A program made the translations under genes and the position numbers. A stretch of 64,000 nucleotides of DNA from Adineta vaga. Its lineage: Eukaryota; Animalia; Rotifera. The first letter of the stretch is position 1; every line of letters starts with the position of its first letter. Where the stretch lies: assembly GCA_021613535.1 (NCBI GenBank), contig CP075494.1, forward strand, positions 14,508,001-14,572,000, in the 5' to 3' direction. The notes beneath the pieces are model-generated. The model was not told the DNA's origin, did not search any database, and was given only the letters and a program-made list of their open reading frames with translations. This document shows positions 36,022 through 46,209 of the stretch, in pieces.

Positions 36022-39000
36022 TTAATCACAATAAAAGATTCTCATAAATTGCTCAATTGAAATAAGATTTTTAGTCAGATTTTCATTTTGAACATCCGCT
36101 ACTGATCGCATTGTTTTCGGAGTATGATAAAAAGTTGTTGTTTGATTTAAAAGAGTCATTCGACGATTCGTTACTTTCGTTGATTGTTTTGGTGTTGATC
36201 GTACTTGTTGTTGTTGTCGTTGTTTATCATCTTCAATTGTAAGTTTATTGAAGATTCGTTTATAAATATATTCGATTGCTTCAGAAAATGATCGATTAGC
36301 TCGTAATTTCTTTCGAGCCATTTCATCTTTAGCAATTAATTGAAGTAAAAAGCAAATTTGTTCAAAGATATCATGACCATTATTTTGATAAAATTTCAAA
36401 AGAAGCATAGTAAAATCTTTGATATGTTCAGATTTGTCAATTAGTTTAAAAACAAGGTCTTCTTTTACAGTAAACAATTGCAAAATACTCAATACTTTAC
36501 TAAGTAAAATTGTTGATGGTCCACTTCGATTACAACATTTCATTAAGATAAAAAACAATCGTAATAGACCTTGTTGAGCTATTAAATAACGTATTTCTAC
36601 ACAACAAGCGATCACCGGTTCAATATCGCGTAAAAAATGTAAATAAGCAGTTAATGATAATGCTGATGCTTCAGAAAATTCTTGAACTATTTGCATCATA
36701 CGTTCACGAATGGTTAATGATGAATTCGATGTTGATTTTTGTAAACGAAGTTTTTCAAGAATAAAAACTACTGGATGATGATTAACTGCATTTGCCACAC
36801 GAACTTGATGTCCACGCCAATGAGCCTAAAGTTAACTTATAACGAATATTTTTCCAAAATCAAATTATTTACCTGAACAATTTCAACTGCATGTGTCTGT
36901 CGTTCTGATTCAGATCGTTGTTCATTTGTACGATTATTTTGATCAATTGATTCTTCATTTCTAAGTGTTTGTTGCTGTTGTTGTTGAGATAAGAATAATG
37001 TAAATGTTTCTTTAATCATTTTTGTATTGATTGGATCAACAAATGATGCCTTTATAAGAAAAAGAAATTAAAAAAAAAAGTATTTCAATTATTCTTTAAT
37101 TTACTTCATCTAATTTGTTTGATTCTACGCTGTCAATTTCTGAAATTGCTTCATCAATAAGACACAATGATGTGTTTGTTTTACTTTCTTCTTTTTCAAT
37201 TGTTTTTTCTAATTCAACAAAATCATCCAAAGAAAGTGATGCCATTGTAGCAGCAATTGATGTTCGATGATGATCAATTCTTGTTGAACTTGATCGAGCT
37301 GAATTAAATGATTCGTCTTCTTCTTCTTCTTCTTCTTCTTCGTTATTATCAACATCATCTGTAGGAAATTCAGATAATAAATCTAGACGATCAAGAATAT
37401 CATGATTCATTGTAGTCAAAACTGATTGTGATATATCATTAATATGCGTTATCGTCTTTTCGTCTTCGTTTTTAACTGGTACTGATATGGGTTCTGATTG
37501 AATAATTGGAATCAGATGAGTATTTTCTGTAGGATAAGTAAGCGAAAGTTTAACAATCATAAGTTCTTCAATTGGTGTTTCATTTGATAGAGAAATTTCA
37601 GGAGAATTCATTGAATTCTCTCGAAATATTGCAATCTCCTCTTTCTTCAATTCAGATGTTAATTCATCATTATTTGAATATTTTTCTTTAAATTCATCGA
37701 AAATTGTTTGATGACGAAAATCCATTTCCTTTGAATGATGATGATGATTTTCGAAAAGTATATCATGTGCAAGCATAGCTAAAATCACTATTGTGCATCG
37801 TTGATCGGGTAAATCTTTTGCATAATAATCATATTTAATTAAATCATATGACGATGATCCAAATTGTTTAATAGATTCTTCTAATAAACGAAAATTTGAT
37901 TTAACATTACGTTCATATAGATTAATCAAATGTTGTTGAGGTTGTTGACCAAGTTCAAGATTAAATTGAATATGTTCATCACGTGTTTGACATGTTGCTA
38001 ATGTTGTCAAATGTTTTATATCACGTTTATAATCACATAAAGATGGAAAATAATATGAAATTATATAAAGAAATGCACGACCATCAGCAAATGATTCTTG
38101 AAGGTCGTATAACCAAAATTTATAATGTGCACAAATCAATTGAACCCATTTGATTAATGAATGAATGATTGATGGAGTGTCTTTTTCCGAAGGAATCAAA
38201 TCAGTTGTTAGAAGACGTTGTTCTATAGGTGAACAAAGTTTTGTTAAATTTTGTGTAAGAATAGATATTTCTTGATTTAATTTTTCAATCGGTAATAAGT
38301 ATTTCGGTAAATAACAAGTAGTAAATATACGCCAAAGTAATTCAAGAGTACGTTGTTTATTTCCATTCATAATATCTTTATTTGAACTAAAGCAAAAAAA
38401 AAACGAGAATAAATCAATTTGTATTTCATTTTTCAAATGAACTTACATTCCAGTTAAATTTACATGTCCATATGTTTGAAGTAAATCAAAAGCTTGATCA
38501 ATATTTAATAATTTATGAACAAGATTAACAACTGGACATTTTAATTTTGTTGATAAATCAAATCTTGCGACTTGTTCATTCGTTGATGATAGTAATATTT
38601 GTGCACACCGTGTTAAACGTATTCCATCTTTTAGATCTTCAAATAATTTATTTTCTTCATCAGAAATTAAATAATTATATTCATCTAATGATGTTTGTTT
38701 ATATGTTGGTTCATATCCAGCTAATTTTAAACGACGTAATAGATTGGTATCTGAACTAATAAAATCACGTGAAAGAACATCAAGTGATTCTTTTGTCGAT
38801 TTAAATTTGGAATCACGATTATATAAACATGGATCATTATCAATTAAACGTAAGATTTTAACACGTTCAAGAAATACGATAATAATTAATAGATTTTTCA
38901 TTGTTAAACGAATTTGTGCTGAAGCAACTTTATTAGTAGTATTCATAGACATTTTCTTTGAATTCATTTCATTTGATAATAAAACATGATTTGAATTTGA

Positions 39001-40094
39001 TTGAAGAAGAAGATATTGATCAATAGCTATTTTCATTTGATGATAATTTTCGATAGTAATTGGAAAAAGAATTTCCATTGCTAATCGAAACCATACTCGA
39101 TTATAAGATGAAATATATTTCATGAACGCTTGTCGATTCACTGATCGTGCTGAAAATGTCAAATCAGATTTCGGATTTATTCGACAATGATCAATATCAA
39201 TATCAGCACTTATTTTCGCAGCAATTAATTGAATATCACGTGCAAATATTTCTCGAGCACGATCACGTACAGTATACCAACGATTTGATTCAATCGAAGA
39301 TTTAAATATATTCTTATTAGATAATTCTTCATGTGATACGGTTTGATTGACTGTCGTACTTGATAAGAAATCAACAGGAGTAAATAATGAATTTAACCAA
39401 ATGGTATATGCATGTGCTTGTTTATCGATGGTATTGATTGATGAAAGATTGAATGGAATACGAGCTCGAATAGCTGGTTGAAAGGAAATGATTGGAGAAC
39501 CTTAACAAAAAAAAATAAAAATAAAATAGACTATAAGAAGAGAAATTTACTTGGTGGAAGAAGTTCAGGAGATGGTTGCAATGATTCTGTACTTGCTTTT
39601 ATCATTGTCGATGATTTTGGAAATGAAACAGGCGCTTTCCAAGTTGATGGCGGAGCTGGTCTAGCTTTTCTTTGTATAAAGATAGGTAGAGAAACACTCT
39701 CATCATCGTCATCGATCATTGTAGACCGTGTTGGTTGAGAAGGACTGATACTAAACATACGATTTTCAACAATGGACAACGTTGATTGATCAGTTTTAAT
39801 TGAATCAACTTCTGTTGTTGATAAATGTATATATTTTGATTTTTCAAGACGAGCATTTTGATCAGAAAGAGGAGAAATAGTATTGAATACATCCATAGCA
39901 CGATCTCGCGAGAGTAATGGCCGTTTAGGAGTAATAGAAGATTCTTCTTCTTCATTATTTTCTAACTAATAAAGATAAATATTGATAAACTATGACTATC
40001 AAGTAGTGGAGTGAACATACTTTTTTCCAAAGAGTCTTTGATAGAAATCTCTCATAGCTGAGATCACCCTTTGGATATTGATTTTCTTGATTCA
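36022..40094 (-). CDS. ASPM: Abnormal spindle / ASPM-like protein (two CH domains, a single IQ motif, C-terminal helical repeat region); about 6 exons
   Basis: DKQAHAYTIWLNSLFTP, SYNRVWFRLAMEILF, RLIDNDPCLY, YKQTSLDEYNY, DLKDGIRLTR, DIMNGNKQRTLELLW, ESFADGRAFLYIISYYFP, IQ motif VQAHWRGHQVR and C-terminal LMKCCNRSGP. Confidence 0.88.
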
Positions 40095-40552
40095 TTGGAA
40101 TGAAAAAGATGAATGATCTTTTCTTATCAAGAAAAATAGAATTTGTCTTGTAAAGCAAATTAATATCTGTACCAGAAGAAGACGCAAAACAAAATATGCT
40201 TTTTGACTTGAATGTAATGCAATGAAGAATTTATCTTCTTTCTTTTTTGAAACAAAGATTTCATCCGATTTGCCAATAGAATTTGGAACGATATTGTACA
40301 TATACATGAACTGATGACAAGAGATGTCGCACTTAGTAACATTGTCAAAGAGTGAAGCAATAAATGTTTGGGTTCTGAATTTTTCAAAACTTTTGCAAAG
40401 AGCTGATGACTCTCTCGCAAAAAGTAATATTTCATACCTAAAACTTTCATATCAGTAGTGAAGACAATACAGTTATAGTTTACGAGATTATTCGTATATC
40501 TCAAAACGACGGTTAGAATGTGGATAATGTAAGAATTGACCGAAGTTCAGAA

Positions 40553-42243: not shown

Positions 42244-43899
42244 ATGCTGTTGGAAAAGAATAACCGAATGAATTCATTCAACGGAGAAACTTCAAAAAAT
42301 ATTGCTAAAAATCAATCAGTATATTCTGATATGGATGGAATATTTGATTGTACTTTAATCAAAGTAAAACAATTCAAGGTCTAAATTATTCGGAAATAGT
42401 TAGTTTATACGTTACTTTTAGTACAATGATGATAATAGCGCAATTTTAGATGAAATTCAAATTAAGATTGTCAATGATTCTTTGAAATATTCTTTGTTAA
42501 TACTTAAGTAAGAATAATAATAGATTATTTATGATTAATTCAAGTCTATGCAATGATTATTATAGGTCGAGCGATGAAACAAGTATTGATATATCGGATA
42601 GTAATATTGAATCAGTGAAATCTAGATTCCATTCCATGTAAGTATGATACTTGAAATACTAAAAGCAGATTAATGCTTATTTTACTTTTTAGATTCCACA
42701 ATCTAACAGGAAACGTTTGGAAATACCGAGAGAGATTTCTGCAAGTTCCAGGTAATTATTATTTGTTGACAAATGATTTAAATTCATTGGTAAGAAAAAT
42801 GATTTTTCTACATAAATTATTTGATGAGGAAATTTTCCTTTTCATTTTAGTCAAGTTCTGAAGAACAACAAACGATATTAAACAAAATAAATGATATGCC
42901 AAGATTTTTTTTAAACGAACGAGCTTTCTTCAATATTCGAACAAATTCAATACAAGAAACGTATCCATATACTTTTAATGGTACAAATTGGACGATTATC
43001 ATTCCAGAAATCTCAAATGAAAATCAAATCAAATCATCATTGTTATCCATTAGATCATTTATTGTTAGAATTGGAGTCGTTTATGAAAATGACTCGTCGA
43101 TCTGTATGACATATGGAAGTGGTTTTCTTATCACAAGTAGTGAAATTCTAACCTGTGGTCACATATTTGACCCAATTACATGGGACAAAGAGAAAATATC
43201 ATATTCGAAAATTTACATTACATTTTGTGATCCAGCACCGAACAAAATTTTTTCTACATTACATAGAAATGAAACACTATATTCGGCGAAAGTTATTCGA
43301 CGTGGTTTATCAAATCAACATATCGATGAATTTAGTGAAATTAAACAAACCGATACTGATCTTGCTCTATTGCAGCTAGAGGATCAGTTACCAAATCTAT
43401 CGAAAGATACGTATTTTGATCCGAAAGTGAATGTAATTACAGGTGATATTCCAATTAATTCAAGATTGTATTTAGCTGGATATAATGGAGAATCGAAAAA
43501 AGAGTATGAGTTAAGTCCATACAAATATCTGAAAAATTTCCAAGGATTAACAATGGATAAATTAAATAAACATCATAATGGGAATTATAAATCAATTTCA
43601 ATTGGTAATTTTATAAAAAAATCAAGTGAAGATAATCCATATTCTTTTCATACATGTAGTACATTATCAGGTTCAAGTGGTTCGTTGATTCTTGATCTTT
43701 ATGGAAAATTAGCAGGGGTACACATCGGTATAAACAATTCCAGAAAAAAAAGAGCAGTGAAATGTTCTTTACCGATGAAACTTTTAATCAATATCTGTCA
43801 ATTAATTCTCATCAATTTCAACAATTTATTCATGAAACAATTTTACCAAATATAAAAGATAATAATGTTAAACAACAATGGTTATTTTCTTCTCGATAA
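42244..43899 (+). CDS. WGR-like domain + trypsin-like (Trypsin_2/V8-type) serine protease fusion; 5 exons; probable -1 frameshift at 43744-43751
   Basis: Exons 42244-42378, 42422-42507, 42566-42637, 42693-42789 and 42851-end splice in frame through GT-AG introns. The N-part has VYSDMDGIFDCTLIKV..SVKSRFHSIFHNLTGNVWKYRERFLQVPGNYYLL. The C-part has GSGFLI, ILTCGH, DLALL, HTCSTLSGSSGS and LAGVHIG. The zero frame stops at 43855; the -1 frame runs to 43899. Confidence 0.8.
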
Positions 43900-44649
43900 A
43901 AGATTTTTTTGTACATTGTATATTTCTTTTGGTCATTCAAATAAATACTCTTTATCATCGTTTATTGAAGAAAGATAAAATCGATTGTTATAGAAGTTAA
44001 TAATCATAAATTAAAAATCGAATATCATGTTTAAAACTTTGATTTTTTGTTCTTCATTTGTCATTGTTTGATGATTCTGAAAAAGAATATTTATAATATT
44101 CTGATGCCTTTGTTGATAGTCAAATATTCAATTTTGAAACTCTTTGCTCTTTCAAATAGAAGAAGATTTCGTCGCTTTTCAGCTAATGAATTTAACTAAT
44201 ATGAAAACTAATTTTGTTCTTGAACAAAAGATCATATGATGAAGAATAAATTAAAGTATTTTTATTCGAATATTCAATTGATAGTGATCATTGTGGCCAA
44301 GTAATGATCGATGCAACGTTTTGTTTAGGAAAGAATTTATGAAAATCTGTTGCATAGGTGAATGCTAATAGAGAATACGAAGTATTGATAAATTTAAAAT
44401 ACAAATAATAATAAGATATCGAATTCGTATGATTGATGAATGAATCAGTGAAATAGATTGATAAAAAGAAGAAAGATAGACTTTCTCTCTATATAGTTTT
44501 TGTAGGGATTAAATAATATCATTTCATTTTTCAACCCACGACTTTTGATTGATTACATAAATGGAAAAGAAAGAACTTTAATTATAAAAACTCACGATAT
44601 TAAGTGATTTATAGAGAAACAAGTGTTTCACGCAAAATAAAACTATACT

Positions 44650-46209
44650 TTAAATAATTGTTACTAGCAATCTACCTTTTGTTACTACTATTTGATTTGT
44701 TTTTGACGCAGGTGAATGGAATCGACGAGCATTATTTATATTTCTTGGTATGATTACAGATTTTGGTCGAATTATTGTTTGTTTTAACTGTTTTTGTCTC
44801 TTTTCTACCGCTGATTGTGGTCTTTTATTTACTAAAATAGGTTCGATTGATGTAGGCAGATTACAATGAGAATATTTTTTTTGCAATGCTAAAGCTTCTT
44901 CAACAAGAGATCGAAGTAATGGAAATTGATGTAAGAAATCTTTTGCTAATATTTGTGGTTTAGCAGTGAGTTTTGTTTGACAAACCGTGTCGGATGGTGA
45001 CGATGAGGGTAAATTAAATCGTACATTATTCATTGTTTTTCGTCTCATCGGTTGATGTTTTTTATTTTCATCATTATCTTCCACAATGGCTTCACGATCA
45101 TCGAAGTTTGCAATAGGAATCGATGCAATATAAGACAAACGATTTTCTTTTGCCTGTGAAATCATCTTTGTTGTTGATGGCGTCTTCATATGAAGAAAAT
45201 CCGAATCCGAATTGAAATATAATGCTGGTGGTTGATAGAAAGATATGGTAGGATCATCTAATGATGGATCTTCTATTGTACGTAAATAATGACTTTTCAA
45301 TTGATGATCATGATGTGTTCGTGTTTTGGTACTTGTCCAACGAGTCTGAATCGATTTGTGATTGTTTGATAATGATGATAGTGGCAGATCACTACGAGAT
45401 AATTGTAAACCGACATCTTTTTTTTCGTTAACAAAATGAATGTGTTTGACAATAGTATCCGATGTCGTTTGTGAAGGAACTACAGATTCAACAATTGGTT
45501 GTTTGACGATAGCTGGGACCCTAAGAATAAGGTGAAAATATGACAATTAGTTCTTCATATATCTTACTTTTTCTCAGTTTTTTTCATGGATTCTTCATCA
45601 AGTACAAACAACTGTGTTAAAAACGTTGTACCATAATGACAGAAACGCACGGCAATATCACAAGTACCAATTTTTGTACCCATTAAATTGAAAAGTGTAC
45701 AACAAAATGTTTGCTGTTCGACCAGTGGTATATCGGTTCCATTTTTCTGAATTGATTGATTCAATATTTCAATCAACTCATTCAATTTTACATTACAACT
45801 ACCAATAAAATGTGATGTATTCGTATTACTCGTATTAATTTGATCAATTAATAAAATAAAAAGTGGAACATTGAGTAAATGTGTGTATAAAGTTTTGAAA
45901 TGTTTTAAATAAACACGATTTTCCACGTTTAAAAGCAAATTTTCCCTTTGCTGTACGAAATTCATAAAATTGATCAGATAATAATTGTCGCCAAGAAATA
46001 TTGGGATATTCGTTTTTCTTCGTATGAAATTCATCTATTTGCCATTGATCAAAATATGGTATCGATACAGCTGGATAATCAAGTAACCGGAAAACAATAC
46101 AAGGTAGATGGCATTCAATATTTAAATCAATTTGAACTTGACTGATAAGTACTTCAATGGAAAGAAGACTCGGAAGATTATCCGACAATTCAGTCATCGT
46201 TCGCGGCAT
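44650..46209 (-). CDS. MAP10: MAP10 (KIAA1383)-like microtubule-associated protein, N-terminal C2-like domain; frameshifted at about 45903, 3' end uncertain
   Basis: LLSIEVLI..PCIVFRLLDYP..FKRGKSCLF / LYTHLLNVPLFILLID..FIGSC..LFNLMGTKIG..VRFCHYG, and later FPLLRSLVEE. There is a 47-nt intron at 45567-45521. The domain switches frame at TTT-AAA-A-CAT with no intron. Confidence 0.7.

What the first reader, a model, noticed from the sequence alone, without database searches (positions are those of the whole stretch)
42244..43899. PARP-type WGR-like domain fused to a bacterial-style trypsin-like serine protease: candidate nucleic-acid/DNA-break-sensing protease
Seen: four small exons, mostly missed by the ORF track, splice in frame to the 1-kb protease exon. 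They encode ..VYSDMDGIFDCTLIKV..IQIKIV....YSLLIL..SVKSRFHSIFHNLTGNVWKYRERFLQVPGNYYLLTND. Known: this matches the PARP1/2/3 WGR pattern (VY..YD..L..; F...F..KTGN.W..R..F...PGKY..L.D), and WGR is the DNA-break-binding domain that allosterically activates PARPs. The eponymous W-G-R triplet is not conserved here (LKSSDE). The protease triad is intact (TCGH, DLALL, STLSGSSG) and is of the Trypsin_2/V8 type common in bacteria and bacterial conflict systems, not the disulfide-rich GDSGG animal type. This gene model has no signal peptide. Inference: a chimeric intracellular sensor-protease, possibly a horizontally acquired intronless protease joined to a host intron-containing WGR. It could couple DNA damage or foreign nucleic acid to proteolysis, which would be attractive in a desiccation/radiation-tolerant animal. 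I know of no described WGR-protease architecture.
Basis: partly seen in the sequence, partly recalled or inferred. Interest (0 to 1): 0.85.

Follow-up and report, generated by a model that had tools for sequence, protein, structure and literature searches.

The report
Rotifer PARP2-WGR exons fused to protease
Bdelloid rotifers built a new gene by joining the four exons that encode the DNA-break-binding module of their own PARP2 repair enzyme to a microbe-type protease; the module has lost most of its DNA-gripping residues, and the copy in this genome is frameshifted.

Summary
The fusion is real. Five exons splice in frame in Adineta vaga, and full-length, triad-intact homologues (469-524 aa) exist in four Rotaria species. 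The N-terminal module is a WGR domain (human PARP2, E 5e-11; top Foldseek hits). All four of its introns match those of the rotifer's own PARP2-like gene in position and phase, so it is a DNA-level duplicate whose downstream PARP exons were replaced by an intronless Trypsin_2/V8-type protease. That protease's nearest identified non-rotifer kin are in amoebae and bacteria, and its S1 residues predict cleavage after Glu/Gln. An intronless retrocopy and one spliced contig support a joined transcript. (1) Seven of nine PARP2 DNA contacts are lost, including W151, R153 and K183, so DNA-break sensing is unlikely. (2) This copy is broken: a one-base frameshift at 43744-43751 removes the last strand and helix, the second haplotype is also frameshifted, and the three paralogues in the genome are dead. 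The family shows purifying selection, module swapping and frequent loss, which fits a dispensable regulated (possibly defence) protease.

The parts
42244..42363 (+). Exon 1: start (ATG 42244; homologous ATG 42268) and first strands of the WGR-like domain; ends phase 0
   Evidence: aligns without gaps to the PARP2-like exon that ends at the same site, 0/2000 shuffles as good
42364..42421 (+). Intron 1 (58 nt), same site and phase as the A. vaga PARP2-like intron
42422..42507 (+). Exon 2 (86 nt; 89 in PARP2-like): carries the equivalents of N127 (kept), K130 and Y132 (lost); ends phase 2 in Lys where PARP2 has the Trp of W-G-R
   Evidence: PMC6294510
42508..42565 (+). Intron 2 (58 nt), same site and phase as the intron in the WGR Trp codon
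42566..42637 (+). Exon 3 (72 nt; 84 in PARP2-like): W-G-R reads K-S-S and the DNA-binding hairpin is four residues shorter
42638..42692 (+). Intron 3 (55 nt), same site and phase as PARP2-like
42693..42789 (+). Exon 4 (97 nt, identical length to PARP2-like): C-terminal WGR helix and tail; K183 is Leu, W188 and Y201 kept
   Evidence: (hhalign prob 92.6, E 5e-7)
42790..42850 (+). Intron 4 (61 nt, phase 0): the fusion intron; in the PARP2-like gene it leads to the PARP regulatory and catalytic exons
   Evidence: spliced across in one contig of run X2
42851..43743 (+). Exon 5, in-frame part: Glu-rich linker (S-E-E), ERAF segment and Trypsin_2/V8-type protease with His 43160, Asp 43358, Ser 43676, S1 Thr190 and His213 (43721)
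43744..43751 (+). A8 run, one base short of homologues: frameshift; the shifted frame stops at 43853-43855
   Evidence: a DNA contig of run X4 at depth about 68 agrees with the window here
43752..43899 (+). Out-of-frame ancestral C-terminus (last beta-strand and helix of the protease), stop 43897-43899
43940..43945 (+). AATAAA, candidate poly(A) signal
   Evidence: sequence; not tested

Best explanation
SHOWN: a bdelloid gene family made by exon shuffling. The four WGR exons of the host WWE-WGR-PARP2-like gene were duplicated at DNA level and joined, at the phase-0 intron after WGR, to an intronless V8/Trypsin_2-type protease that has no identified animal relatives outside bdelloids. The family is under purifying selection, swaps modules between paralogues, moves between loci and is often pseudogenised; the window copy is one such damaged copy. 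INFERRED: the intact protein is an intracellular protease that cuts after Glu/Gln (His213 plus Thr/Ser190). The WGR fold no longer reads DNA ends but serves as a protein-binding regulatory module (bait, adaptor or inhibitor) that keeps the protease off until a partner or an invader's factor engages it; release may involve self-cleavage in the conserved S-E-E linker. The likeliest setting is a fast-turning-over defence or stress-signalling role rather than core DNA repair. The stated confidence is for this inferred mechanism; the anatomy and origin are about 0.95.
For: Four of four introns shared with the PARP2-like gene, exon 4 identical in length, chance about 2e-7 on a simple random-placement model. 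WGR fold. Intact five-exon genes in R. sordida, R. magnacalcarata, R. socialis and R. sp. Silwood1. Intronless full-length copy among intron-bearing neighbours. dN/dS 0.18-0.35 for the WGR exons against the three closest Rotaria copies and mostly 0.3-0.55 for the protease. Loss of 7 of 9 DNA contacts and a net charge of -4 to -9 against +1 and -3 in the host PARP2 WGRs. His213 in 40/40 and Thr/Ser190 in 37/40 bdelloid sequences (PMC5508998). S-[ED]-[ED] linker in 16 of 18. Discordant WGR and protease trees (AU p 0.037 and 0.0005). Lesions in the window, L002, L003, L004 and L027. No copy at the homoeologous site on C2 and different neighbours in Rotaria. Weak similarity to anti-phage retron proteases (E 3e-5).
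Against: No activity, partner, localisation or expression data. The AU groups were chosen after seeing the trees, so those p-values are optimistic. N127, W188 and Y201 equivalents are kept and one subgroup keeps Y132, so weak nucleic-acid binding is not excluded. Frequent loss fits neutral decay as well as an arms race. His213/Thr190 do not by themselves fix the specificity (PMC5508998). The full-length model is poor (pLDDT 53) and says nothing on domain contacts.
Confidence: 0.5

Rival explanations
1. DNA-break or foreign-nucleic-acid sensor protease: the WGR-like domain binds DNA ends and switches on the protease as WGR switches on PARP2.
For: The protease sits where PARP2's regulatory and catalytic domains sat; the fold is kept and selected; N127, W188 and Y201 equivalents remain.
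Against: W151, R153 and K183 are lost in every member aligned, and each is needed for a stable PARP2-DNA complex (PMC6294510); the hairpin is four residues shorter; the domain is acidic; all copies found in A. vaga are broken.
Confidence: 0.13
2. PARP-pathway or chromatin protease working like FAM111A: the WGR mimic docks on PARP domains or PARP-associated factors and the protease removes trapped PARP or other protein obstacles.
For: FAM111A is an intracellular Trypsin_2 protease with trapped PARPs among its proposed substrates (PMC9798293); ESM features list FAM111A-family clusters (14 of 30 hits, score 0.90).
Against: FAM111A scores far below amoebal and bacterial kin (E 0.73 and 0.007 in PDB searches); the N-terminus is a WGR fold, not UBL domains; patchy loss does not fit a core repair role.
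Confidence: 0.12
3. Passenger fusion: the WGR exons only supplied a start, introns and a folded leader for a foreign protease gene; the family is drifting to extinction.
For: Many dead copies; Didymodactylos and a metagenomic bdelloid-like copy show no WGR exons upstream, only a probable short first exon; an intact 469-codon retrocopy has Arg at the catalytic Ser.
Against: WGR exons show dN/dS as low as 0.18-0.35 at dS about 0.8-1.0, lower than the protease in the same pairs; intact fusions persist in four Rotaria species.
Confidence: 0.2
4. The protease is a vertically inherited, very divergent animal enzyme (for example of the FAM111 group), not a horizontal acquisition.
For: The tree does not resolve the sister of the bdelloid clade; ESM lead to FAM111A; only 30 of the 95 profile hits were looked up by cluster.
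Against: In 1.84 billion representatives the best identified non-bdelloid hits are Heterostelium (4e-8), Naegleria (2e-7), Acrasis and bacterial conflict-type proteases; no other animal among those identified; the exon is intronless; other A. vaga trypsin-fold genes score at E 5e-5 or worse.
Confidence: 0.08
5. The window copy is in fact functional: the A8 run is an assembly error, or slippage or -1 ribosomal frameshifting at A-AAA-AAA yields full-length protein.
For: Homopolymer errors are common in long-read assemblies (own knowledge); the run forms a slippery heptamer in the right frame; splice sites and triad are intact.
Against: An independent 2013 DNA run has a contig agreeing with A8 and a second haplotype with +2, +1, +1, +2 insertions, two of them inside the catalytic motif; no stimulatory structure downstream (z -0.4 and +0.7); homologues need no shift; nine RNA-guessed runs of the same species label held next to none of the words.
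Confidence: 0.12

Closest known systems
PARP2 (ARTD2) WGR domain and the A. vaga WWE-WGR-PARP2-like genes (G000 C1:6.206 Mb, C4:6.806 Mb)
   Same: Fold, four intron positions and phases, exon 4 length, W188/Y201/N127 equivalents, position N-terminal to an enzyme domain.
   Different: W-G-R reads K-S-S, hairpin shortened, K130/Y132/Q159/K179/K183 lost, acidic; followed by a protease instead of PARP_reg and PARP catalytic domains.
V8/glutamyl endopeptidases and bacterial conflict-system trypsin-like peptidases (PMC5508998, PMC7159879)
   Same: Chymotrypsin fold, Trypsin_2 hit, T-x-x-G-x-S-G motif, His213 and Thr190, best PDB match glutamyl endopeptidase (E 5e-11 with the wider profile).
   Different: No signal peptide, large insertions and an ERAF N-terminal segment shared in part with amoebal kin; fused to a eukaryotic module; no operon context.
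FAM111A/B (PMC9798293, PMC7067828)
   Same: Intracellular animal Trypsin_2 protease with N-terminal regulatory domains, tied to replication obstacles and antiviral defence.
   Different: Only distant sequence similarity; WGR-like module instead of PIP box and two UBL domains; an analogue, not an orthologue on present evidence.
Bdelloid N4CMT (PMC8885841)
   Same: Foreign enzyme fused to a eukaryotic chromatin-type module in bdelloids.
   Different: N4CMT is conserved across bdelloid families with an intact reader domain; this family is patchy, multi-copy, often broken, with a degenerate reader.
Fungal PARP1-peptidase fusions (bioRxiv 10.64898/2026.07.25.740670)
   Same: A peptidase domain joined to PARP-derived domains.
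   Different: Those keep the whole PARP1 and add S10 or M24 peptidases; here the PARP catalytic part is gone and only WGR remains.

Membership tests
WGR domain (PF05406), PARP2 type | Sequence homology over the domain | tested here: met
   Family profile vs human PARP2 WGR E 5e-11; P0009 hits PF05406 positions 1-78/79 at E 0.004, below the curated cut-off
WGR domain (PF05406), PARP2 type | WGR fold | tested here: met
   Rotaria homologue model, pLDDT 79; Foldseek top hits PARP2 WGR, TM 0.61-0.66, E 0.005 and weaker; VIA-align top four PARP1/3 WGR, Z 7.3-8.6
WGR domain (PF05406), PARP2 type | Descent from the host PARP2-like gene (shared introns) | tested here: met
   4/4 positions and phases; the PARP3-like gene has other sites
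WGR domain (PF05406), PARP2 type | W-G-R motif and DNA-contact residues | tested here: not met
   7 of 9 contacts named in PMC6294510 lost
WGR domain (PF05406), PARP2 type | DNA-break binding and allosteric activation | not testable with these tools
   needs binding and activity assays
PARP enzymes | PARP regulatory and catalytic domains | tested here: not met
   none in the window ORFs or full-length homologues
Trypsin_2 / V8-type serine proteases (PF13365) | Pfam hit above cut-off and His-Asp-Ser triad | tested here: met
   43.9 bits against a cut-off of 27.6; triad in window and most homologues
Trypsin_2 / V8-type serine proteases (PF13365) | Complete two-barrel domain in the window copy | tested here: not met
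   frameshift at 43744-43751 removes the last strand and C-terminal helix
Glutamyl endopeptidase-like S1 pocket | His213 and Thr/Ser190 | tested here: met
   40/40 and 37/40; alignment to V8-like chain 4jcn
Glutamyl endopeptidase-like S1 pocket | Cleavage after Glu/Gln | not testable with these tools
   needs a substrate library
FAM111 | Close protease homology, with UBL domains in most members | tested here: not met
   E 0.73 and 0.007; N-terminus is WGR fold; FAM111 was not available for the tree
Horizontally acquired bdelloid gene | Nearest relatives non-metazoan, nested with support | tested here: inconclusive
   identified hits are amoebal and bacterial only; bdelloid clade 97/86 but sister unresolved; no viral relative found

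The most novel reading that the evidence does not exclude
In species with intact copies, the remodelled WGR domain still senses a damage or invader signal (unusual nucleic-acid ends, or a PARP-directed pathogen factor for which it is an integrated decoy) and directly switches on a Glu/Gln-specific protease: an animal one-protein damage-to-proteolysis switch built from a DNA-repair sensor and a microbial conflict effector.
Probability: 0.2. Interest if true: 0.85.

Novelty: new variant of a known kind. Interest (0 to 1): 0.6.

Why it matters
It is an unusually clean record of how a foreign enzyme was wired to a host module: four shared introns name the donor gene and the fusion intron. It shows a WGR fold kept under selection after losing its DNA-reading residues, which points to a second, protein-facing use of the domain. 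Intact Rotaria genes make the function directly testable. It should not be cited as a candidate for A. vaga's radiation tolerance, since every copy found in this genome is damaged.

Tried and rejected
Pfam on single window exons: no WGR hit, too short and diverged. As the operators' note requires, the joined spliced model of the window was not searched or folded; exons were handled one by one and natural full-length homologues stood in for the whole protein. NCBI's own 240-aa model of this locus (P0005) skips exon 4 and the catalytic His and conflicts with all homologues; rejected. Full-length AlphaFold model too poor (pLDDT 53) for domain contacts; its fold searches gave only generic trypsin folds. 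No relative in viral contigs; no NCBIfam family. No WGR exons upstream of the Didymodactylos or metagenomic copies. No remnant at the C2 homoeologous site, which holds a homeobox gene. The start of exon 5 is not significantly like PARP2 exon 5 (148/2000 shuffles), so the junction is placed in the intron. No frameshift-stimulating structure. Paper searches for bdelloid plus WGR, and WGR plus peptidase or trypsin, found no such architecture; the library lacks most subscription papers. The His count came from a faulty pattern and was redone and one search were slips.

Full report
Source. The window lies on contig C5 of a 100.8-Mb, six-contig genome. An NCBI protein of Adineta vaga, I4U23_026609, is a partial model of this very locus, so the organism is the bdelloid rotifer A. 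vaga.

Observation. The four small exons and the protease exon are there, with canonical introns of 55-61 nt and phases 0, 2, 2, 0 that keep the frame. The protease exon hits Trypsin_2 above its cut-off and has His, Asp and Ser in place. One thing was missed. The open frame leaves the family alignment at an 8-A run (43744-43751) and stops at 43855, while the homologous C-terminus continues in another frame to 43899. By alignment to a V8-type structure the lost part is the last beta-strand and the C-terminal helix. A 2013 DNA run holds a contig that agrees with the window across this site, and a second haplotype about 9% different with insertions at 43510, 43674-5 (in the catalytic motif) and 43743. 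These are assembled contigs, not raw reads, and I take the second haplotype for the other allele from its equal depth. The three paralogues in the genome carry stops or are fragments and keep at most the tail of exon 4. The locus is therefore most likely a young pseudogene.

The family is real. Full-length proteins of 467-524 aa with the same two parts are annotated in Rotaria sordida, R. magnacalcarata, R. socialis and R. sp. Silwood1 and 2, and a damaged-looking model in A. ricciae. Four loci that I read have the same five exons and an intact triad. Two lines support a joined transcript. A contig of run X2 (RNA by guess only, a close relative, depth 3.8) enters exon 5 with 13 letters that match the end of exon 4 at 12 of 13 and not the intron. 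An intronless 469-codon copy sits among intron-bearing neighbours in two public runs, which is what a retrocopy of the spliced message looks like.

The N-terminal half. A profile of the Rotaria domains matches the human PARP2 WGR end to end (E 5e-11; PARP3 2e-5), and a model of one of them returns PARP2 WGR chains first. The strongest evidence is gene structure. The host's WWE-WGR-PARP_reg-PARP gene on C1, and its counterpart on C4, have four introns in the WGR at the same aligned sites and phases; exons 2-4 are 89, 84 and 97 nt against 86, 72 and 97 here. The PARP3-like gene has other sites. So the module is a DNA-level duplicate of the host PARP2-like exons, and the protease replaced the regulatory and catalytic exons at the phase-0 intron after WGR. 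The intron in the Trp codon fixes the register: W-G-R reads K-S-S. Of the nine DNA contacts named for PARP2 (PMC6294510), only N127 and Y201 are kept in the window; W151, R153 and K183, each needed for a stable DNA complex, are lost in every member aligned. The domain is also more acidic than the host WGRs. Yet it is under purifying selection (dN/dS 0.18-0.35 against the closest Rotaria copies).

The protease half. Among 1.84 billion representatives the strong hits are bdelloid-like; the best identified outside hits are from Heterostelium, Naegleria and Acrasis, then bacterial proteases annotated with endonuclease G, death-like domains or V8. I looked up 30 of the 95 hits; none was another animal. 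The bdelloid sequences form one group (97/86) with Didymodactylos copies at its base, but the sister group is unresolved. Didymodactylos copies show no WGR exons and seem to have a short first exon before a phase-0 intron, which suggests that the protease came first and was fused later by recombination in that intron; loss of WGR in that lineage is the alternative. Horizontal origin is likely but the donor is not shown. FAM111A appears as a language-model lead but scores far lower by sequence. His213 is invariant and Thr/Ser190 nearly so, as in Glu- and Gln-specific proteases (PMC5508998), and a Glu-rich S-E-E linker is conserved just before the protease.

Evolutionary behaviour. Copies sit in different neighbourhoods, the homoeologous interval on C2 has none, trees of the two modules disagree (groups chosen after seeing the trees), and lesions are common, including a stop in one R. 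magnacalcarata locus, a Gly193-to-Asp copy and Arg at the catalytic Ser in the retrocopy. This is birth-and-death behaviour, more typical of defence or signalling families than of core repair genes (inference).

Mechanism. Shown: architecture, origin of the WGR half, loss of DNA contacts, selection, damage to this copy. Inferred (0.5): an intracellular Glu/Gln-cutting protease held in check or aimed by a WGR-fold protein-binding module, perhaps released by self-cleavage in the linker, in a dispensable defence or stress role. Rivals: passenger fusion (0.2), nucleic-acid sensor (0.13), FAM111A-like PARP or chromatin protease (0.12). On separate questions: a vertical origin of the protease 0.08, and a functional window copy 0.12.

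Comparison and novelty. It works, at most, like sensor-plus-protease proteins of bacterial conflict systems (PMC7159879) or like FAM111A (PMC9798293), and it arose like bdelloid N4CMT (PMC8885841). It is not a PARP and not a FAM111 member. UniRef's automatic names already call some members WGR-containing, but I found no paper on the architecture; the closest are fungal whole-PARP1 fusions to other peptidases.

Noticed in passing
L017 (G000 C1:11.858 Mb) and L018 (C4:14.323 Mb): Both PARP1-like genes split the Trp codon of W-G-R with a non-canonical intron that reads AT..AA or AT..AC, at the same site and phase as the GT..AG intron of the PARP2-like genes.
   Followed up: partly
L029:1392-2801 and L030:1017-2426: Intronless full-length copy of the fusion with Arg at the catalytic Ser but an intact 469-codon frame, in an unnamed animal's genomic contigs; possibly a retained pseudo-enzyme.
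   Followed up: partly
L005, L006, L007 (G000 C1:8.99, C4:3.35, C5:2.73 Mb): Three large PARP genes with intronless WGR domains and upstream ankyrin-like stretches.
   Followed up: no
L013 (G000 C2:15.2256 Mb): A short bacterial-style WGR followed by a basic tail and a stop, with no PARP domain in the stretch read; perhaps the gene of scan note s1-494518.
   Followed up: no
L068:454-1047: The A. vaga PARP2-like gene carries an upstream WWE domain.
   Followed up: no
window 37096-40504 and 44650-46209, minus strand: Flanking genes: a calponin-homology gene that looks ASPM-like (from memory) and a second conserved gene; both have homoeologues at C2:2.776-2.782 Mb, where a homeobox gene lies between them instead of this locus.
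   Followed up: partly
L036, L040, L043, L044, L051 (G000): Several long intronless frames for secreted, bacterial-looking trypsin-fold proteases unrelated to this family.
   Followed up: no
P0071, P0083, P0072, P0099 and related metagenomic proteins: An apparently unnamed group of intracellular Trypsin_2 proteases in amoebae (Heterostelium has a tandem two-domain form) sharing the insert after the G-Y-P strand with the rotifer enzyme.
   Followed up: partly
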